In this document: piece after piece, positions 1 to 18,609 of the stretch
Numbering within the stretch: position 1 is the stretch's first letter
Layout of the letters: each line of letters starts with the position of its first letter
Assembly (NCBI RefSeq): GCF_006345805.1
Contig: NW_021824470.1
Location: forward strand, 1 to 18,609
Direction: 5' to 3'
DNA: 18,609 nucleotides
From: Octopus sinensis
Taxonomy: Eukaryota
Translations under genes and position numbers: made by a program
Notes under the pieces: model-generated
Told to the model about the DNA's origin: nothing
Database searches by the model: none
Seen by the model: only the letters and a program-made list of their open reading frames with translations

Positions 1-35
1 CGCTGAGGTGAGAGTATATGAGACGAAAGAATTTA

Positions 36-179
36 AAATAATAGTAATAATAATAATAATAATAGTAGTAATAATAATAATAATGATAATAATAATAATA
101 ATAATAATAATATCAATAACAATAATAATAATAATAATAATAATAAAATAATAATAATAATAATAATAACAATAATATT

Positions 180-212
<33 letters not shown>

Positions 213-271
213 TATAATAATAATAACAATAATATAATAATAATAATAATAATAACAATAACAATAATATT

Positions 272-312
<41 letters not shown>

Positions 313-325
313 TAATAATAATAAC

Positions 326-366
<41 letters not shown>

Positions 367-373
367 TAATATT

Positions 374-409
<36 letters not shown>

Positions 410-554
410 TAATAATAATAATAATAACAATAATAATAATAACAATAATAATAATAATAATAATAACAACAATAATAATAATCATTATAATAATAATAAC
501 AATAGTAATAATAATAATAATAATAACAACAACAACAACAATAATAATAATAAT
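36..554 (+). repeat. (AAT)n microsatellite with AAC/AGT/TTT interruptions
   Basis: About 520 bp of AAT triplets, read directly. It explains the poly-I/Y/L ORFs 33..617 and 212..472. Confidence 0.98.
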
Positions 555-1056
555 GGCGTTTGTTTTACAAAAAACCTTCAAGTAGATAAGAATATTCTCT
601 GGGTGTTGCCAGGACATATGAAAAATAAATTTTGTAATTTAAAAGAAGTCGAGTACACATGAAATCGTGATTAGGGAACAAGGTCGTGATTTCAAATACA
701 GGACCGAGAGGTGTTTTGCGCACAAGATACTTCATCTCATGTTACACAGCGACCATTTCAACACTTGACGTGTAGGGATGGTGACTAGCTGGAAAATGGA
801 TTTATTTTCCGGATATTAAAGAATTTCAGCCAATCACGTACCTCAAGGTGAAAATACTGCCACTCTCGTTTAAAAAAAATTGAGAATTATTACAACAGCG
901 TATTTCATTCAGTATGCTTATCGGATAGCAGCCGGAACGGGAGACTAAAAATTTATATGAGGCAATAGAATATTCAGATAAGTGGATACAACTTTTAATT
1001 TCAGTAAAAAATTTGAAACTGAAGTAATATTTGGAGTCGGCGTTATAAAGGTAAAC

Positions 1057-10016: not shown

Positions 10017-10228
10017 ATAAATCTACGCCTGGCAACATGTTTCACCACGTAGTAATATAGACGGTCTCTTGTGTTGATACTGTGTACGATATTGTTTTTG
10101 GAGACTCAAGCTGATTCAGATATATGCAAGATATGTACTTGCAATTCACTTACAACCAATATAGATTGTTGTGTACATCGCAATTTACCATCGATTCCAC
10201 AACCAATTCCGACGAATGTTGAATATTT
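10017..10228 (+). CDS. Exon A of an extracellular LRR protein gene: signal peptide plus LRR N-terminal cap; apparent 2-nt frameshift near 10055-10060
   Basis: Acceptor: ctctgac...tttcctattttcttcttttacag|. Start: caacATG at 10037. Donor: tt|gtaagt at 10229. The downstream frame reads YRRSLVLILCTILFLETQA-DSDICKICTCNSLTTNIDCCVHRNLPSIPQPIPTNVEY(L), a hydrophobic leader plus a CxxCxC...C....L..IP..IP LRRNT. As written, the ATG frame stops at TAG 10058-10060; adding AT to ATAT restores the join. Confidence 0.8.
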
Positions 10229-11597
10229 GTAAGTATTTGACACTTTCTACGTATTTTCCACATCCAATATTTTAAATTCTCATTGATTATGTTCTCAGCT
10301 AATCGCTTATGCTGTTTATCTCACAGCTTTAAGCACAATCTTATGTTAGAGTAAAACAATCGATATGTTACCTGCTGTGAAGTCAAATAAACTGTTACTT
10401 ACCATATTGAATTATAATATATAACATCGCATACACAGAGATTGGCTATGACTAGTATCTGACTTTGATTTCATTTGTCTGAACTTATCAAATCTTACGG
10501 TATATTCAATGAATGGACAGTATAAAAACTTTAGTGCTAAGAAAACGTGTATTCCACATAGTTATATTATATCATTAATTAGTTGAATTGTTACTTATTG
10601 TTACAGTAATATGATATAATATCAGTTGATCGTGTCACAGAATAATTGTTAATTATTGTTTGTGTTAATTTTATTATAGAATATGCAGCGAGCTATCAGA
10701 ATCGTTGTGCACGCCAGACAAAATGTTGAGCGGTATTTCGTTCGTCTTTACGTTTCGATGTTAAATTCTGTCGAGGTTGACATTGTTTTTCATTCTTTTG
10801 GAGTCGGTAAAATAATTAGCAATTTATCTCTGAGATCAATGTAAAGGACTTGTCCCTTTCCCAAAATTTCAGGTTTGTTCCTATAGAGAAATTATTATTT
10901 TTATAATTAAAAATGAAACAGATGGATTAAACAGCAGATAATGACGAGATCCGCTTAAATTGCCAATTCTTAAAATACCTAAGTGAAGAAATCAAAATAG
11001 TTTGTGTTTTAACAAATTATGAGGAATTATTTTTGATAGAATGTCATCAGTAAAATTTACCCTATCACGAACACAATAAAACTTATTACAAAATTATGCA
11101 AGCTTAATTGAAGTTTCGGCTGATTGATGTATCCCCGTTCACCTGAAACCTTACGCAATTTTTAAGTAAATTATTAAAATTTAACGTCTCAAGAAATGGA
11201 ATAGAATAAAAAAGAGAAATTATTTGATACATGCAATCATAACAAATACTCTGTTGCAACACATTGCTCTTCCAGGTGATTACTTCCAGTTAATTGGCTT
11301 GCATCATTGCATTAATCACCTTAAACTTTCAGTTTTAATCAAATATTCTAATACTAAAGTGGATCAATTCATTCGATCATATCTATTTCTCAAAACATTT
11401 GGAAGGTTTTGACAAAATGAGAAATCCTAATGTAAAATAAAGAGAAAAGTTTCAATAATGGAATCCCTAAATCTCGTATAACTCAAGATGTTGAATAGTA
11501 AAGTTGAAGTTCTGTTTAATAAGTTAGATATTTTCATCGTTCATAACTTGAGCGAGGATAGGCACAAATCTTTTGACCGTCTAGTAGAATACATTGC

Positions 11598-11695
11598 GTT
11601 CTGACACACGGCAATCTGACGTCAAATCCCGCCAAGGTCAACCTTGGGTCATTCATTTCAGAGATCAATAAAGAACCATAACTGTTCAATGAACA
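11598..11695 (+). mobile_element. Degenerate SINE head (paralog at about 16426-16520)
   Basis: tctgacgtcaaatcccgccaaggtcaaccttgggtcattcatttcagagatcaataaa resembles the B-box ..gttcaaatcccgccgaggtcaactttgcctttcat family also seen at 2350-2494. Confidence 0.5.
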
Positions 11696-11856
11696 AATGC
11701 AACCATGAGGACCTCGAATAAGACACCTTGCAGTATATTGTCCAGTTGTCTGTGACCTGAGTTAAAATTCCACACTTTTTATTTTAGCGATTTTGGAGAA
11801 AGGATCATACAAGTTTTTTAACCCCTGCAAGATCTCCAATACTTGTGAGACAGATA

Positions 11857-12237
11857 TCTCTCTCTATATAAACGGCAGTTTGTCTGTGCGTTTTCTGTGT
11901 GTCTGTTTACTCGTACCTTCACTCTGACCACGGCTTTCAACCGATTCTGATGAAACTTGACACACACATAGCCCAATGTCATAATTCAAAACTAACGCAG
12001 CGAAATTTTAAAGTTCCCCCAGTTCTGAAAAAAATCGATAAATTCGACATGGGGTCGAGAATCAGAAATCCAAACCACAGACCGTCAAGGGGACGCAACT
12101 CCACCTTTTTTAACTCTCAAAAAAAATTTACCATCATTTTTTTTCCATTTTTTTGCTATTTTTTGGCTATAACTCTCTAAAAATGCTTTATAGTTATTTC
12201 CCTTACAAACCTGAGCAACGCCGGGCGATACTGCTAG
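11857..12237 (+). mobile_element. Non-autonomous Helitron (381 bp)
   Basis: Starts TCTCTCTCTATATAAAC and ends CTAG. A subterminal hairpin, cctgagcaacgccggg, lies ~11 nt from the end. It is inserted between A and T with no TSD, and the empty site cagata|tcatt is at 16686/16687. Confidence 0.93.
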
Positions 12238-12929
12238 TCATTAATATTCCGTTTGAGCTGTTACAGGAATGATTAACAGGGATGCTATTTAGGGGATGAA
12301 GGATTTAGCATAGATGGCAAATAATGGGAACAAACTGAGGTTTAATACAGCAAGAGTAAGGAGCAAAGGGCTAAAAAAAGACGAAAAAACTAAGGCAATG
12401 TATGTTGCCACATCCCTTTTTTAAATAACACCCTTAACCAGTTAAATCACCATGTAAGGTTGTTCTCCTTTGTAGCACACAACTCAAAATTATATCAGGG
12501 TTTCCCCACTCTACCATCACCAATTCTATTAATAAATCCCTTTCTATTTCTGTTATGTTTTCCTTCCTAGTCTATTATTTCAGTCTTGAAGTTTTGGGGG
12601 CTTATTTATTTTTGTGAAGAACTTTTATGCATCAATTATGCAAAGGAGAGGAGTTTACTTTTGCAAAGATAAATTACTTTTGACAGCAAAGTGTAATAAC
12701 AAATAGAATGCTCATTGGACAGAAACAAGATATTTATAAATAAAGCTGACTTCTGAGATGATAAAAATATCTTCCACTGAAAACTGATGTTGCAACGAAG
12801 GCTTTGTAAATCTAATTCAAATCACAAATATTTTGAACATCCATTCTTTTCTCATATTTTACATGCATGTGTGTTTTTCATTCATACTTTACGTGGTGAC
12901 TTAAATCTGTTTTATATCTTATATAATAA

Positions 12930-13675
12930 AATATACGAAAATGCAAACAGAACCTTCGTGAAGACGAAAAGAAAGCCTTACAAACTGCAAATTGACAATT
13001 TAATCATCCTAAACGAAACCGATTGGGGAAGGTGATAGCAGTCACGGACCAAGACTACTATAAAGATAAAATATTGGAAACAGACTAATCCTGCTACAAG
13101 GAAGAACCAAGACACGCGGAGAAAGTAATAATGAATACACCCAAAATTAAGATAAATGAATACCAACGTTCGTTCACAGATAAAGAGAAAGATTATTTAT
13201 GCAGCTCTGTAATGAAAGAGAGTAATTTCTATGGATCACCCAAGATCTGCGAATGCTCCAAAATGCAAGGATCAGCATATAAAAATACTAAGACCTACTG
13301 ACATCAAATTGAGACCAACAGTTGCTGGACCTTGAGCCCCAACACAACAACTGAGCCATCTTTTGGATATGCTCCTCAAACCGTTGTGCCCATTAATGCC
13401 CAGCTATACCCGAGACGATATGGATTTCATCAAACACATTCACCCACTGTCCCAGAACGTACTATACTTAAAAGATTTGACTAATCTTTGTACAAATACA
13501 TCACACTTTGGGCCTGGGAGCAATCAAACACTGGGTAGAAAAACATAGCGGACGGATGGACGAACGCTTCAAAACGCATTTCCAAAGACACACGCCGGGA
13601 ACTAGAAGACAACACCTTTAGATTCGATAATAAACTGTATCGACAGATAAAAGGACGCCACTACGGGGACGAGGT
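12930..13675 (+). pseudogene. Penelope-like element reverse transcriptase fragment (copy 1)
   Basis: Pieces read NLREDEK..AL, DQDYYKDKIL, ESNFYGSPKI, LRPTVAGP.APTQQLSHLLDMLLKPL, SYTRDDMDF, DLTNLCTN.SH..G..AIKHW and NTFRFDNKLYRQIKG, in the order expected for a Penelope-type RT. Confidence 0.85.
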
Positions 13676-13877
13676 TCACACACATACTCGCACCCAGAGT
13701 AGATATACATATGTGTGTATATTTCTGAGTGTATATGTGTGTATGTGCTTATATGTGCATACATGTGCGTGTATGTGTGTGGATGTGTGTGTTGGTACAT
13801 AGAGAGGCGAAGCGGATACTCGAGGTTGTGCAAGTCAAGTAGGAAATAAAAATGAAACGGCTGCCACGTTAAGATAT

Positions 13878-14022
13878 TCTTCTCCTCCTGCTTCTTCTTC
13901 TTCTCCTTCTGCTTCTTTTTTTTCTCCTCCTTCTTCTTCTTCTTCTTCTTCTTCTTCTTCTTCTTTATCTTTCTTCTTCTTTTTCTTCTTCGTTATCTTT
14001 ATTCTTTTTCTTCCTTTCATTC
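13878..14022 (+). repeat. (TTC)n pyrimidine tract ~75 nt upstream of exon B; paralog at about 18330-18462 upstream of exon C
   Basis: Read directly. Confidence 0.93.
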
Positions 14023-14097
14023 TCAAGTCACAGTGTTTGATATCGTATCACAAATATTTTCCAAATAATCTATTTTACACTTTCTTTACTACCACAG

Positions 14098-14169
14098 AGC
14101 TCTTTGGGGCAACAGGATTTCAAGCATCAATGAAGGAGCATTCACGGGGCTTTCAAATTTAAAGGGATT
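14098..14169 (+). CDS. Exon B: one 24-aa typical-class LRR (72 nt, phase 2-2)
   Basis: tttctttactaccacag|a gct ctt tgg ggc aac agg att ... aag gga tt|gtaagt encodes (L)ALWGNRISSINEGAFTGLSNLKG(L). It is exactly 72 nt, matches LxLxxNxIxxIxxxxFxxLxxLxxL and splices in frame to exon A. Confidence 0.92.
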
Positions 14170-15159
14170 GTAAGTTCGTTCAGTTTCTTGATACTATTTT
14201 CCGAAAGTAATAATTGATGCTGATATATAAGCTCACAAATGTATAAAATTTCAGACTGAACGAAACAAAATTAATTCAAATTTGAGGATCGAACAAAATT
14301 TAGGAAGATACAAAGAGAATAGGAGAGAACGAGACAATGTGACAGAAAGAGAGAGAATTTGAGAGAGAAAGTGAAATAATAGGAAAAATATAATGTTCCT
14401 TTATTGTAGTTGCTTTGTTTCAATTCGCATCTCAATAACTCATTTTTGTTCCCCAAATTTCAATGATTTTGATATGAATTTGTATTAGAAATGGTAACGT
14501 TTGTGAGTTTACATGTTTTCATCAAATATATATTTAGCTGAAGTATATGTGTATGTTCATATATAAGTGTAGTTCTGTGTGAAATGTGACTATATCATTC
14601 CTTTATTTTATATTTTGCATCTTCCTCCATTTCTTATTTCAATAATCTCCTTCGTGTTTCGATATTATCATTCAACTTCGAATTTTGTCATTCACTTCAC
14701 GTTATTTATGTAATAGAGCAACTGAAGTGGAAGCGGAAAATATATATTCGAATAATATAGTCACATACATTCTATCTGTAAACCTGAAATACTTACTGTA
14801 CTTGTAAGCTGGGATATTTGGCCTGATACAATTAAACTGCTGATATATTTCTTGTAAGCGTGTGTTTTCTAATATTCTTGTGACAATGAAGCGATATGAA
14901 ATAAATAATCTCTCTCACCATATTTCCACAAGGGTGAGTGGGAATATGTGTGATGTGAGTGTGCATACCGCATTCCGTCGTTGATACTATGAATATAAGA
15001 ATGCGTATGAGTGCATTTGAATATGTTGATTTCTGATTCCGTATATTCCCTGATTTTTCAGCCATGTCTCCTCGCCCAAAATTTATCGATCTATCCTTGA
15101 ATTATTTCCTGATATTTTAAGAACATTTTCAGTTTCATCTTGAACGCCATAATTTTCAA

Positions 15160-16392
15160 TGTATCTTCTTCGTCTTCTTCTTCTTCTTTCCTCCTCTTCT
15201 TCTTCTTCTTCTTCTTCTTCTTCTACTTTCCTTCTCTTCTCCTTCCTTTTCTTCTTCTTCCACTTCTTTTCTTCTTTTTCTCTCATGCTCCTACTGCTGT
15301 CCTTTCCTCCTTCTTTTTCTCTCTTCGTTTTCTTCTTTTCCTTCTTCTTCTTCTTCTTCTTCTTCTAATCTTTTTCTTTTCATCTTCTACTCATCCTACT
15401 CCTTCTTCCTCTTCTAATTTCTTTCTTCTTCTTATTCTTCATTTTCTTCTTTAAATTCTCTTCCCCCTCCACTCCGCCCCTCCTCCTCATTTTTCCTCTT
15501 GTAATTCTCCTCCTCCCCTCCTCTCCTGCTCGTTTTTTCTTTTCTTCTTCTTCTTCTTCTTCTTCTCTTCTTCTTCTTCTTCTTCTTCTTCTTCTTCTTC
15601 TATCGCTTCTCCTTCTCCTTATTCTTTTTCTTCTTCTATCGCTTCTACTTATTTCTTCTTCTTCTTCTCCTACATCCTCTTCTACTTTCAACTTTTTCAA
15701 CTACTCCTCCTCCTCCTCCTCCTCCTCTTCTTCTTATTCTTCTTCTTTTTCTTCTACTCCTACTTTTCCACTTCATTGCTTCCTCCTCCTTTTTCCTCTT
15801 CCTCTTCTACTTCTTTTTTCCTCTTCTTTCTTTCTTCCCAATCCTCTCCGCCCTTCCTCCTCCTTTTTTCTTGTAATTCTCCTCCTCCCCCTCCTCTCCC
15901 GCATCTTTTTCTTCTTCTTCTGCGTCTTTCTTCTACTTCTTCTTCTTCTTCTTTTCCTCCTTCCTTCTTCTTTTCTTCCTTCTCATTTTTCTACCTTTTT
16001 TTCTTCTTATAATTCTTCTCTTCTTCTTCTTCTTCTTCTACTACTTTCTACTTCAACATTTACTTCTCCTCCTACTCCTCGTTCGTCTTCTTATATTCTT
16101 CTTTTTGTTATTCTCATCCTCCTCCTCCTTCATCTTCTTCTTCTTTTCCATATTCTCCTACTTATTCTTCCCCATCATTCTCCTCCTCCTCCTTTTTCCT
16201 CCTCTTCCTTCTTCTTCTTCTTCTTTCTACTTCTTCATTTACTTGTCATCCTCCTCCTCCTCCTCCTCCTCCGTCTTCTTCTTTTACTTTTTCCGCTACT
16301 ACTTCTTCCCTTTTACCATCCTCCTCCTCCTTTTTCCTCCTATTACTTCTTCCCCTTCTTTTTCTTCTCCTTCTTCTCCTTTCTTCTTCTAC
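15160..16392 (+). repeat. ~1.2 kb (TTC/TCC/TAC)n polypyrimidine microsatellite
   Basis: Read directly. It explains the poly-S/F/L and poly-E/R/K ORFs. Confidence 0.98.
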
Positions 16393-17389
16393 TAATACTT
16401 TTGACCGTCTAGCAGAATACATTGCGTTCTGACACACGGCAATCTGACTTCAAGTCCCGCCAAGGTCAACCTTGGGTCATTCATTTCAGAGATCAATAAA
16501 GAACCATAACAGTTCAATGAACAAATGCAACTATGAGGACCTCGAATAAAACACCTTGCAGTATATTGTCCAGTTGTCTGTGACCTGAGTTAAAATTCCA
16601 CACTTTTTATTTTACCGATTTTGGAGAAAGGATCATACAAGTTGTTTTAAACTCCTGCAAGATCTCCAATACTTGTGAGACAGATATCATTAATATTCCG
16701 TTTGAGCTGTTGCAGGTTAACCTTTACAGGAATGATTAACAGGGATGCTATTTAGGGGATGAAGGATTTAGCATAGATGGCTAATAATGGTAACAAACTG
16801 AGGTTTAATACAGCAAGAGTAAGGAGCAAAGGGCTAAAAAAAGACGAAAAAACTAAGGCAATGTATGTTTGCCACATCCCTTTTTTAAATAACACCCTTA
16901 ACCAGTTAAATCACCATGTAAGGTTGTTCTCCTTTGTAGCACACAACTCAAAATTATATCAGGGTTTCCCACTTACCATCACCAATTCTATTAATAAATC
17001 CCTTTCTATTTCTGTTATGTTTTCCTTCCTAGTCTATTATTTCAGTCTTGAAGTTTTGGGGGTTTATTTATTTTTGTGAAGAACTTTTTGCATCAATTAT
17101 GCAAATGAGAGGAGTTTACTTTTGCAAAGATAAATTACTTTTGACAGAAAGTGTAATAACAATAGAATGCTCATTGGACAGAAACAAGATATTTATAAAT
17201 AAAGCTGACTTCTGAGATGATAAAAATATCTTCCACTGAAAACTGATGTTTGCAACGAAGGCTTTGTAAATCTAATTCAAATCACAAATATTTTGAACAT
17301 CCATTCTTTTCTCATATTTTACATGCATGTGTGTTTTTCATTCATACTTTACGTGGTGACTTAAATCTGTTTTATCTTATATAATAAAA

Positions 17390-18127
17390 TATACGAAAAT
17401 GCAAACAGAACCTTCGTGAAGACGAAGAAAGCCTTACAAACTGCAAATTGACAATTTAAATCATCCTAAACGAAACCGATTGGGGAAGGGTGATAGCAGT
17501 CACGGACCAAGACTACTATAAAGATAAAATATTGGAAACAGACTAATCCTGCTACAAGGAAGAACCAAGACACGCGGAGAAAGTAATAATGAATACACCC
17601 AAAATTAGATAAATGAATACCAACGTTCGTTCACAGATAAAGAGAAGATTATTTATGCAGCTCTGTAATGAAAGAGAGTATTTCTATGGATCACCCAAGA
17701 TCTGCGAATGCTCCAAAATGCAAGGATCAGCATATAAAAATACTAAGACCTACTGACATCAATTGAGACCAACAGTTGCTGGACCTTGAGCCCCAACACA
17801 ACAACTGAGCCATCTTTTGATATGCTCCTCAAACCGTTGTGCCCATTAATGCCCAGCTATACCCGAGACGATATGGATTTCATCAAACACATTCCACCCA
17901 CTGTCCAGAACGTACTATACTTAAAAGATTTGACTAATCTTTGTACAAATACATCACACTTTGGGCCTGGGAGCAATCAAACACTGGGTAGAAAAACATA
18001 GCGGACGGATGGACGAACGCTTCAAAACGCATTTCCAAAGACACACGCCGGGAACTAGAAGACAACACCTTTAGATTCGATAATAAACTGTATCGACAGA
18101 TAAAAGGACACCACTACGGGGACGAGG
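17390..18127 (+). pseudogene. Penelope-like RT fragment (copy 2)
   Basis: Near-identical paralog of 12930-13675. Confidence 0.85.
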
Positions 18128-18539
18128 TTCACACACATACTCGCACCCAGAGATAGATATACATATGTGTGTATATTTCTGAGTGTACATGTGTGTATGT
18201 GCTTATATGTGCATACATGTGCGTGTATGTATGTGGATGTGTGTGTTGGTACATAGAGAGGCGAAGCGGATTCTCGAGGTTGTGCAAGTCAAGTAGGAGA
18301 TAAACATGAAACGGCTACCACATTAAGACATTCTTCTCCTCCGCTTCTTCTTTCTTCTCTTCTTGCTTCTTTTTTTTTTCTCCTTCCTTTTCTTCTTCTT
18401 CTTTCGTTATCTTTCTTCTTCTTTTTTTCTTCGTTATCTTTCTTCTTCTTTTTTCCTTCCATTCTCAAGTCACAGTGTTTGATATCGTATCACAAATATT
18501 TTCCAAATAATCTATTTTACGCTTTCTTTACTGCTATAG

Positions 18540-18609
18540 AGATCTGCAATGGAACAACATTGCAACCATCAAGAAGGTACATTCACGGGGCATTCGAATT
18601 TAAAGACAT
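18540..18609 (+). CDS. Exon C: second LRR exon, running to the window edge, with a 1-nt deletion
   Basis: tttctttactgctatag|a gat ctg caa tgg aac aac att gca acc atc aa- gaa ggt aca ttc acg ggg cat tcg aat tta aag aca t encodes (L)DLQWNNIATI?EGTFTGHSNLKT. It sits at the position paralogous to exon B. The donor site is expected just beyond the window. Confidence 0.82.

What the first reader, a model, noticed from the sequence alone, without database searches (positions are those of the whole stretch)
10017..18609. Hidden LRR receptor-like gene built from duplicated intron+exon cassettes with hypervariable exons and near-identical introns
Seen in sequence: three phase-2 exons splice to signal peptide-LRRNT-PTNVEYL|ALWGNRISSINEGAFTGLSNLKGL|DLQWNNIATI?EGTFTGHSNLKT. 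About 2.2 kb of intron upstream of exons B and C is ~96-99% identical, and ~60 consecutive identical nt end about 20 nt before the acceptor. The exons nevertheless differ by 17 substitutions plus 1 gap in 71 nt (~75% identity; 9 amino-acid changes, 3 synonymous). All four variable positions of LxLxxNxI differ (A/D, W/Q, G/W, R/N) while the L, N and I framework is kept. Established knowledge: these positions form the concave ligand-binding face diversified in lamprey VLRs and plant and animal LRR receptors, and exons normally diverge less than introns. Inference: an array of interchangeable single-LRR cassettes, in which unequal crossover or conversion homogenises the introns while selection keeps the exons different. 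It could be an undescribed diversified immune or recognition receptor, using module-number variation, exon skipping or cassette exchange.
Basis: partly seen in the sequence, partly recalled or inferred. Interest (0 to 1): 0.88.

Follow-up and report, generated by a model that had tools for sequence, protein, structure and literature searches.

The report
Broken copy, octopus LRR-cassette gene family
The window holds the damaged 5' end of one member of a young, many-copy Octopus sinensis gene family in which every leucine-rich repeat is its own 72-base exon. Across the family the few codons that face the ligand vary far more than the surrounding introns, a pattern known elsewhere but apparently not described for octopus.

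Summary
The sequence facts hold. Exon A (10017-10228), exon B (14098-14169) and exon C (18540 to the contig end) have the stated splice sites and phase. About 2.2 kb upstream of B and C is 1.0% diverged in substitutions. The exons differ by 17 substitutions plus one gap.

The gene is not hidden or unique. The window is a whole unplaced contig of Octopus sinensis. At least 27 near-full copies of exon A plus intron exist. RefSeq names intact paralogs "slit homolog-like" or "LRRC15-like". Paralogs carry 10-15 tandem 72-nt LRR exons in cassettes of about 2.5 kb.

The "near-identical introns" are two copies of the family's intron-1 segment. Copy 1 is closer to other loci than to copy 2. The junction at 16398 is unique to this contig, so it is either a private rearrangement or a misjoin.

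Exon-limited hypervariability is real across the family. Intron diversity is 0.03-0.13, against 0.30 in exon bases 1-24. It peaks at LRR positions x3, x5, x7 and x8. Exon synonymous divergence (about 0.2) exceeds intron divergence, which favours exchange or retention of old exon variants.

This copy is frame-broken in exons A and C. An immune role is untested.

The parts
10017..10228 (+). Exon A. It holds the start codon region, a hydrophobic signal-like stretch and the LRRNT (CKICTCNSLTTNIDCCVHRNLPSIP), and ends in phase 2 (..GAA TAT TT|gtaagt).
   Evidence: Thirteen paralog sequences read MFHHVVSYRRSLVLILCTILFLETQADSDIC... from the same ATG.
10037..10060 (+). ATG (10037-39) followed by a private 2-nt deletion (TC missing between 10054 and 10055). 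This brings TAG (10058-60) into the ATG frame. A private 3-nt insertion further on adds a Cys to the LRRNT.
   Evidence: alignment with 13 paralog sequences; frames.
10229..14097 (+). Intron 1. The first 1.34 kb occurs once in the window. The rest is the segment repeated at 16398.
11570..14097 (+). Copy 1 of the family's intron-1 3' segment. It is present once per paralog at 91-99% identity and is not an independent mobile element.
   Evidence: all near-full copies lie on contigs that also hold exon A; distances.
11859..12237 (+). A 379-nt insert. It is present in copy 1 and in paralogs C29a and C29b. It is absent from copy 2, C11145 and C25.
13871..14005 (+). Short pyrimidine microsatellite (92% C+T) upstream of exon B. 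This is where the family's 2.5-kb cassette begins.
14098..14169 (+). Exon B. A 72-nt phase-2/phase-2 single LRR, (L)ALWGNRISSINEGAFTGLSNLKG, intact. Its acceptor region carries 3 private changes.
14170..16397 (+). The ordinary cassette intron. About 0.95 kb of mixed sequence is followed by a 1.3-kb tract (15120-16397) that is 90% pyrimidine on the coding strand.
16398..16400 (.). Junction between the pyrimidine tract and the second intron-1 segment. It is unique to this contig.
   Evidence: every other genome match to 16300-16480 stops at query positions 99-101.
16398..18539 (+). Copy 2 of the intron-1 3' segment. It is 1.0% diverged from copy 1 by substitutions, lacks the 379-nt insert and carries 13 private indels.
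18540..18609 (+). Exon C. A first-LRR-type exon, (L)DLQWNNIATI[K]EGTFTGHSNLKT. It has a 1-nt deletion (frameshift) and a private Leu-to-His change at a framework position. The contig end cuts it off.

Best explanation
The window is a whole 18.6-kb unplaced contig of Octopus sinensis.

What it holds. It carries the 5' end of one member of a recently amplified gene family. The protein plan is signal peptide, LRRNT, n x 24-aa LRR, LRRCT, then a Cys-rich module. Each LRR is a separate 72-nt exon flanked by phase-2 introns, inside a roughly 2.5-kb cassette. A cassette is the exon, about 1 kb of intron, a 1.3-kb pyrimidine tract and about 100 nt of conserved pre-exon sequence.

What the repeat is. 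The two "near-identical introns" are two copies of the family's intron-1 segment. That segment differs by at most 1.3% among at least 8 loci because the loci are young or are kept alike. The second copy, with exon C, is a first-LRR unit placed behind the first cassette. It got there either through a private duplication or unequal exchange, or through an assembly misjoin.

Shown here. Diversity peaks sharply in the exon, at LRR positions x3, x5, x7 and x8. The AlphaFold model puts x3 and x5 in the beta-strand, with x7 and x8 directly after it. Exon synonymous divergence (about 0.2) is several-fold higher than intron divergence. Most exon variants are shared with cassettes at other positions.

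Inferred. The exons draw on an old pool of variants. That pool is moved between cassettes by short-tract gene conversion or exon shuffling, or is shielded from the homogenisation that keeps the introns alike. Selection favours different concave-face residues. Unequal crossing-over changes cassette number. Because all exons are symmetric and 72 nt long, cassettes can be skipped in frame.

State of this copy. It has frame breaks in exons A and C. It is therefore either a pseudogene fragment or poorly polished sequence.
For: Species and contig.
- RefSeq names and contig lengths identify the species. The window is all of contig C941.

Family size.
- Exon A plus intron gives 41 matches, 27 of them nearly full length at 94-98%. 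They include loci on chromosome-scale scaffolds C29, C25 and C5.

Cassette arrays.
- There are 10-15 exons of 72 nt per paralog. The unit corresponds to window 13877-16400 and repeats every 2.4-2.7 kb.

Intron-1 distances.
- Copy 1 to copy 2 is 1.0%. Copy 1 to C6338 and C29a is 0.7%, and to C3171 0.8%.

Diversity profile.
- Across 36 cassettes, pi is 0.03-0.13 in introns and 0.30 in exon nt 1-24.
- In 7 closely related first-LRR units, divergence is 0.4% at 700 nt upstream and 5% just before the exon. It reaches 26% in exon nt 1-24 and 10-12% in the rest of the exon, then falls to 2.5-9% downstream.
- Fisher p=6e-4 to 3e-10.

Codon analysis.
- Framework codons: pS 0.18-0.21, pN 0.03-0.05.
- Four concave codons: pN 0.56-0.58, pS 0.40-0.43.
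- A concave set chosen beforehand gives pN/pS 1.03, against 0.35 elsewhere.

Shared variants.
- 25 of 35 minor exon variants of first-LRR exons recur in cassettes at other positions. Upstream the figure is 4 of 20.
- The intron tree mixes genes and positions.

Structure and isoforms.
- The LRR part of the model has pLDDT above 90, with strands at x3-L4-x5 every 24 residues.
- Isoforms X3 and X6 of the C25 gene include different cassettes.

Damage in this copy.
Against: - No reads or transcripts were available. I could not establish whether B and C are adjacent in the real chromosome, whether they are spliced together, or whether the frameshifts are real.
- dN/dS above 1 rests on four codons chosen after seeing the data, with about 2.5 synonymous sites and saturated differences. 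The set chosen beforehand gives only about 1.0.
- High synonymous diversity rests on about 12 sites and four or five two-state positions.
- Some "loci" are redundant haplotigs. C11691 equals part of C29, so the number of independent comparisons is lower than it looks.
- RefSeq isoforms are models, not sequenced full-length transcripts.
- Gene conversion was inferred from patterns. Tracts were not mapped.
Confidence: 0.72

Rival explanations
1. Assembly artefact. The last 2.2 kb (16398-18609) would come from intron 1 and the first LRR exon of another paralog or haplotype, joined to the contig by a chimeric or misplaced long read. Exons B and C would then not be neighbours in one gene, and the within-window contrast would simply be a comparison between paralogs.
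For: - The junction is unique in the genome.
- The contig is short and unplaced, and ends inside exon C.
- Copy 2 has 13 private indels against 3 in copy 1 and 0-1 elsewhere, as expected for thinly covered sequence.
- Copy 2 lacks the 379-nt insert.
- Copy 2 is no closer to copy 1 than to C6338.
Against: - The join is not inside a repeat shared by both sides. A pyrimidine tract meets mixed-sequence intron, so an overlap error is not an obvious cause.
- Another family fragment, C7677, also shows a local duplication of the same intron piece, so real rearrangements occur.
- No reads could be examined.
Confidence: 0.4
2. This locus would be a working, previously unrecognised diversified immune receptor. 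Its cassettes would be kept different by selection and used through exon skipping, shuffling or cassette exchange.
For: - Concave-face hypervariability.
- Cassette arrays of variable length.
- Isoform models with different cassette content.
- Clustered, fast-turnover family with broken members.
Against: - This copy has no open frame from its ATG and a frameshift in exon C.
- Paralogs are already annotated.
- No immune signalling domain was found in the models.
- The downstream modules and O. vulgaris model names point to an adhesion-GPCR-like ectodomain. The published octopus expansion of that kind is expressed in suckers, skin and axial nerve cord (PMC6408891).
- Somatic change is untested.
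Confidence: 0.12
3. Plain positive selection after very recent duplication. Exons and introns would be equally young, and the exon differences would be new mutations fixed by selection, with no exchange between cassettes.
For: - The concave codons show pN of at least pS.
- Introns of at least 8 loci differ by at most 1.3%.
Against: - Synonymous sites of framework codons are also about 0.2 diverged, against 0.004-0.05 in adjoining introns.
- 71% of the exon variants, including all the synonymous two-state sites, recur in cassettes at other positions.
- Divergence decays gradually away from the exon.
Confidence: 0.1
4. The 2.2-kb repeat is a transposable element that inserted twice, once before each exon.
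For: Part of it (window 12940-13680) has 74-80% matches on many chromosomes, so it contains an old interspersed repeat.
Against: - Every near-full copy lies on a contig that also carries exon A of the family.
- The 5' piece (11570-11858) has only 34 genome matches. The 29 at 87-100% identity all lie on contigs that also carry family sequences. Three of the four at 77-79% lie beside diverged exon A matches.
- Similarity runs on through the microsatellite into the pre-exon sequence common to all cassettes.
Confidence: 0.02

Closest known systems
Ectocarpus LRR-ROCO genes with shuffled single-LRR exons (Zambounis et al. 2012, PMC3341825)
   Same: - Each LRR is one 72-nt, 24-aa exon.
- Recently duplicated loci are almost identical except in the LRR domain.
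- Repeat number varies.
- Inactivated exons and pseudogenes are common.
- Selected sites lie on the concave face.
- The genes are clustered, with a high rate of gene birth and death.
   Different: - The Ectocarpus proteins are cytoplasmic GTPases of a brown alga. Here the protein is an animal extracellular type with LRRNT and LRRCT caps and a Cys-rich module.
- I saw no reverse-strand intronic LRR exons in the window.
- Intron conservation relative to exons was quantified here, and each cassette carries a long pyrimidine tract.
Slit and LGR/glycoprotein-hormone-receptor genes (stated from my own knowledge, not tested here)
   Same: - Extracellular LRRs of the typical 24-aa class, encoded one per exon of about 72 nt with the same intron phase, so that exons can be skipped in frame.
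- RefSeq names the octopus models "slit homolog-like".
- LGR4 is among the best PDB sequence matches.
   Different: - Those are conserved single-copy genes with conserved exons.
- The octopus models lack Slit's EGF, LamG and cystine-knot parts.
- The octopus genes form a young multi-copy family with hypervariable concave positions.
Lamprey and hagfish variable lymphocyte receptors
   Same: LRR modules whose concave-face residues are the variable ones, and a stock of many alternative LRR cassettes in the germline.
   Different: - VLR cassettes are not exons. They are copied somatically into an incomplete gene.
- Here every cassette has AG and GT splice sites and sits inside a complete gene.
- No sign of, and no test for, somatic assembly.
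Octopus-specific adhesion-GPCR expansion "group 3" (Ritschard et al. 2019, PMC6408891)
   Same: - An octopus-lineage, co-localised expansion reported with signs of positive selection, with LRRs in 5 of 22 members.
- O. vulgaris RefSeq models of the present family are named "adhesion GPCR G6-like".
- HRM-like exons lie downstream of several loci.
   Different: - No 7tm_2 match was listed within the part of C29 that holds the young LRR loci. The O. sinensis models end before any GAIN or 7TM part.
- Identity of the two families was not tested.
- The paper's passages I read do not mention cassette exons or exon-limited variation.
Plant LRR resistance-gene clusters and other exon-faster-than-intron families such as venom PLA2 and conotoxins (stated from my own knowledge)
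   Same: - Diversity is concentrated in solvent-exposed LRR residues.
- Sequence is exchanged between paralogs.
- Coding differences exceed those in non-coding flanks.
   Different: Plant LRR domains are mostly encoded in large exons. Here the unit of exchange can be a single 72-nt exon with its conserved flanks.

Membership tests
Typical extracellular LRR proteins with Cys caps (Slit/LINGO/LRRC15/IGFALS class) | Tandem 24-aa LxxLxLxxNxI repeats | tested here: met
   Window exons B and C carry the motif. Paralog models hit Pfam LRR_8 at 1e-42 to 1e-76. The best PDB matches are IGFALS, LGR4, TLR3 and LRRC15.
Typical extracellular LRR proteins with Cys caps (Slit/LINGO/LRRC15/IGFALS class) | N-terminal Cys cap (LRRNT) after a signal peptide | tested here: inconclusive
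   The CxxCxC...C...LxxIP pattern is present in exon A. Pfam LRRNT scores only E=0.003-0.009, below its cut-off. The signal peptide was not run through a predictor, and the AlphaFold model shows only an N-terminal helix.
Typical extracellular LRR proteins with Cys caps (Slit/LINGO/LRRC15/IGFALS class) | C-terminal Cys cap (LRRCT) | tested here: inconclusive
   Paralogs have an exon reading ...NNLKRCGCHLPAFVKY...GTCQEGSGKRIPILDYSQCQ. There is no Pfam LRRCT hit. It is not present in the window.
Slit orthologues | Four LRR domains followed by EGF repeats, a laminin-G domain and a cystine knot | tested here: not met
   Pfam finds only LRR families in P0001, P0004, P0006 and P0008. The models are 385-606 aa long.
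Adhesion GPCRs | GAIN/GPS domain and a 7tm_2 membrane domain in the same gene | tested here: inconclusive
   No model reaches a 7TM part. HRM is weak, at E=0.002 and below cut-off. HRM-like exons lie 13-50 kb downstream on the same strand of some loci. No 7tm_2 match was listed at C29 0.57-0.90 Mb, but the search gives lower bounds only.
Single-LRR-exon shuffling families (Ectocarpus ROCO type) | Each LRR is one 72-nt exon with identical intron phase on both sides | tested here: met
Single-LRR-exon shuffling families (Ectocarpus ROCO type) | Repeat number and order differ between recently duplicated loci, and inactivated exons and pseudogenes are present | tested here: met
   I counted 10, 10 and about 15 LRR exons in three paralogs. 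There is a 74-nt frame-broken exon in C25. This window's copy is also frame-broken.
Single-LRR-exon shuffling families (Ectocarpus ROCO type) | Positive selection on concave-face residues | tested here: inconclusive
   pN/pS is 1.8 at four codons chosen after the fact, 1.03 for the set chosen beforehand and 0.35 elsewhere. The sites are saturated and no likelihood site model was run.
Lamprey VLR-type system | Incomplete germline gene completed somatically from flanking, non-exonic cassettes | tested here: not met
   The cassettes are spliceable exons inside complete genes. Somatic change itself cannot be tested with these tools.
Ly6/uPAR three-finger domain | About 90 aa with 8-10 Cys, ending CCxxxxCN, with a three-finger fold | tested here: inconclusive
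   The Cys pattern ...CTGCCVGHLCN is present in paralog models. Pfam gives only UPAR_LY6_2 at E=2.4. There is no PDB sequence match. The model of that part has pLDDT below 50.

The most novel reading that the evidence does not exclude
Octopuses of the vulgaris/sinensis group may carry a germline-encoded combinatorial recognition repertoire. It would consist of a cluster of a dozen or more loci, each with 10-15 single-LRR cassettes whose ligand-facing residues are kept different. Cassettes would be exchanged between positions and loci, and included alternatively during splicing. That would yield a large set of surface or secreted LRR proteins for non-self, prey, chemotactile or neuronal self-recognition. 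It would be an LRR counterpart of Dscam or protocadherin logic.
Probability: 0.15. Interest if true: 0.85.

Novelty: new member of a known kind. Interest (0 to 1): 0.55.

Why it matters
If the family-level pattern holds up, it gives cephalopod biology a concrete, clustered candidate for a diversified recognition system. It would be built from spliceable LRR modules, in a lineage already known for expanded protocadherins and GPCRs.

It also offers a clean case for measuring how gene conversion, unequal crossing-over and selection act at the scale of a single 72-nt exon. The introns on either side serve as an internal neutral yardstick.

For genome annotation, the result is a warning. Unplaced, thinly covered contigs of such families can look like novel "hidden" genes.

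Tried and rejected
1. Extending the contig. The window is the whole contig. The first-LRR comparison therefore rests on 8-9 units.
2. Transposable-element origin of the 2.2-kb repeat. Rejected: all near-full copies are linked to family loci.
3. The idea that the two window copies are each other's closest relatives, as a simple in-place tandem duplication would predict. Not supported.
4. Pfam scan of nine other window ORFs plus one ORF in the 379-nt insert. I suspected transposase or reverse-transcriptase remnants, but there were no hits.
5. Ly6/uPAR identity of the Cys-rich module. Pfam, PDB sequence search and AlphaFold all left it open.
6. A link to 7TM exons. None was listed near the young loci.
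7. A search for the 16398 junction elsewhere in the genome. None was found.
8. Clustering of cassettes by gene or by position in an intron tree. The tree is shallow and mixed, so it fits neither pure concerted evolution nor pure orthology.
9. Literature. Only Ritschard 2019 touches the family, and no paper found describes the cassette hypervariability.

Full report
**Observation check**

- Exon A is 10017-10228.
- Exon B is 14098-14169.
- Exon C starts at 18540 and runs to the contig end at 18609.

All have AG acceptors and GTAAGT donors, and a split TT|N codon, which is phase 2.

The segment 11570-14097 is repeated at 16398-18539. In its clean part there are 23 mismatches and 17 gap events in about 1,630 columns. 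A 61-nt identical run (14018-14078) ends 19 nt before the acceptor. The two exons differ by 17 substitutions and one 1-nt gap.

1. The ATG at 10037 is out of frame with the signal-like stretch. This copy lacks two bases that 13 paralog sequences have.
2. The gap in exon C is a frameshift.
3. Copy 1 holds a 379-nt insert.
4. Copy 2 carries 13 private single-base indels, against 0-1 in most loci.

**Where the window comes from**

The window is the whole of contig C941 in a 2.72-Gb, 13,516-contig assembly. Protein matches and contig lengths identify the species as Octopus sinensis.

Exon A with its intron has 41 matches in the genome. Twenty-seven are near full length at 94-98% identity. Several lie on the chromosome-scale scaffolds C29, C25 and C5. 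Some small contigs are plain duplicates of scaffold sequence, so the number of distinct loci is lower. It is still at least six on placed scaffolds.

RefSeq already models intact members as "slit homolog-like", "LRRC15-like" and, in O. vulgaris, "adhesion GPCR G6-like". The gene is therefore not hidden.

**Architecture of intact paralogs**

Three paralog regions show the same start, MFHHVVSYRRSLVLILCTILFLETQADSDIC..., and the same LRRNT. They then have 10-15 exons of exactly 72 nt, each encoding one LRR.

The repeating genomic unit corresponds to window 13877-16400 and recurs every 2.4-2.7 kb. It consists of:
- about 100 nt of conserved pre-exon sequence;
- the exon;
- about 1 kb of intron;
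- a 1.3-kb tract that is 90% pyrimidine on the coding strand.

After the last LRR come an LRRCT-like exon and a Cys-rich module ending CCVGHLCN. Pfam confirms only the LRRs. LRRNT and HRM score below their cut-offs. The Cys-rich module could not be assigned.

HRM-like exons lie downstream on the same strand of several loci. No 7tm_2 exon was listed near the young loci.

**What the two "near-identical introns" are**

The repeated 2.2 kb is not the family's cassette. It is the 3' part of intron 1, present once in every paralog.

In substitutions, copy 1 is 0.7-0.8% from C6338, C29a and C3171, and 1.0% from copy 2. Copy 2 is 0.9% from C6338. The within-window pair is thus an ordinary between-locus comparison.

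Copy 2 with exon C is a "first-LRR unit" sitting behind the first cassette. The junction at 16398 occurs nowhere else in the genome. The contig ends 2.2 kb later, in sequence of visibly lower quality.

I cannot tell a private duplication or unequal exchange from a misjoin without reads. I put the misjoin at about 0.4.

A transposon origin is excluded, because every near-full copy is tied to a family locus.

**The exon-limited variation is real and family-wide**

- In 36 cassettes, nucleotide diversity is 0.03-0.07 within 100 nt of the exon and 0.11-0.13 deeper in the intron. It is 0.30 in exon bases 1-24.
- In seven closely related first-LRR units, mean pairwise divergence is 0.4% at 700-900 nt upstream and about 5% just before the exon. 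It reaches 26% in exon bases 1-24 and 10-12% in the rest of the exon. It falls to 2.5-9% downstream.
- Segregating sites are enriched in the exon, with p between 6e-4 and 3e-10.
- The variable codons are the exon's first, third, fourth and last codons. These are x5, x7, x8 and x3 of LxxLxLxxN.
- In an AlphaFold model with pLDDT above 90 across the LRRs, the beta-strands fall on x3-L4-x5 of every repeat.

**Selection or exchange?**

Framework codons are under purifying selection, with pN 0.03-0.05 and pS 0.18-0.21. The four variable codons have pN 0.56-0.58 and pS 0.40-0.43. A concave set chosen in advance gives pN/pS 1.03, against 0.35 elsewhere. Whole-exon dN/dS is 0.54-0.65.

The striking point is that even synonymous sites in the exon are several-fold more diverged than the adjoining introns.

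In addition, 25 of 35 minor variants of first-LRR exons recur in cassettes at other positions. These include the two-state synonymous sites CTG/CTT, ATT/ATA, GGA/GGT and TCA/TCG. Upstream of the exon only 4 of 20 variants recur.

The intron tree is shallow and mixes genes and positions.

My reading, which is inference, is that exon-sized pieces from an old pool of variants are moved between cassettes, or are protected from the homogenisation that keeps introns alike. Selection then favours different concave residues. Very recent intragenic duplicates still have identical exons (C29a cassettes 7-9). Nothing therefore suggests exon-directed hypermutation.

**Splicing**

All LRR exons are 72 nt long and symmetric in phase, so any of them can be skipped in frame. 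RefSeq isoforms X6 and X3 of the C25 gene include different cassettes, and both skip a 74-nt frame-broken exon. These are gene models, not sequenced full-length transcripts.

**State of the window's copy**

- Exon A has a private 2-nt deletion and a 3-nt insertion.
- Exon C has a 1-nt deletion and a Leu-to-His change at a framework position.
- Exon B is intact but has three private changes next to its acceptor.

The contig has many private indels, so both decay and poor polishing are possible.

**Comparison with what is known**

- The closest described system is the LRR-ROCO family of Ectocarpus. There each LRR is also a 72-nt exon, recent duplicates differ mainly in the LRR domain, and selected sites lie on the concave face (PMC3341825).
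- From my own knowledge, Slit and LGR genes share the one-LRR-per-72-nt-exon layout but are conserved single-copy genes.
- Lamprey VLRs share the variable concave face, but their cassettes are assembled somatically and are not exons.
- Ritschard et al. 2019 reported an octopus-specific, co-localised adhesion-GPCR expansion with LRRs in some members and signs of positive selection (PMC6408891). Whether it is the same family was not tested.
- No paper found describes the cassette structure or the exon-limited variation in octopus.

**Verdict**

The window itself is a damaged, possibly chimeric fragment. The family it belongs to is a new animal member of a known kind of system and is worth a proper census. 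An immune function is not indicated by anything tested here.

Noticed in passing
window 15120-16397 (also 13871-14005 and 18330-18460): Every LRR cassette carries a tract of about 1.3 kb that is about 90% pyrimidine, always on the coding strand. In four paralog regions, 19-55 windows of 500 nt exceed 85% pyrimidine and none exceeds 85% purine. It may serve splicing control, or act as a substrate for unequal exchange. Neither was tested.
   Followed up: partly
window 11859-12237: A 379-nt insert with A/T-rich runs. It is present in intron 1 of this copy and of paralogs C29a and C29b. It is absent from the second window copy, C11145 and C25. This presence/absence marker cuts across the substitution distances.
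   Followed up: partly
window 12940-13680: This stretch of intron 1 has 74-80% matches on at least 12 other chromosomes, so it holds an old interspersed repeat. Its ORFs gave no Pfam hit.
   Followed up: partly
window 14006-14097 and 14170-14270, and the same positions in 36 cassettes: The 100 nt on either side of cassette exons are less diverse (pi 0.03-0.07) than the deeper intron (0.11-0.13). From my own knowledge, conserved flanks like these are often seen next to alternatively spliced exons.
   Followed up: no
G000 contigs C11691, C12785/C10451/C9761 and C12515/C12516: The assembly holds redundant copies of family loci. C11691 is identical to C29:590-613 kb over 1.6 kb. The other groups give identical hit statistics. 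Copy counts from this assembly overstate the number of loci.
   Followed up: partly
G000:C7677:1087-2276: This contig has two copies of the intron-1 piece (window 11570-11858) only 910 nt apart. It is another rearranged fragment of the family.
   Followed up: no
C25 reverse strand, position 24427-24500 of the 36-kb stretch fetched (L038-L041): A 74-nt, frame-broken LRR exon sits inside an otherwise intact array. Both RefSeq isoforms skip it.
   Followed up: partly
protein P0006 (O. sinensis): The Cys-rich module ending CCVGHLCNKNDFI is repeated three times in tandem in this model. That part of the gene therefore also duplicates as a unit.
   Followed up: no
window 1-600 and 1436-2300: Long AAT/ATA microsatellite at the contig start. 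Further on there are AT- and TG-rich simple repeats that form long imperfect inverted repeats.
   Followed up: no
G000:C10:79.8-80.6 Mb: A dense cluster of more than 30 single-exon 7tm_2 (class B GPCR) open frames of about 650-700 aa. It is unrelated to the window but is a striking tandem expansion.
   Followed up: no
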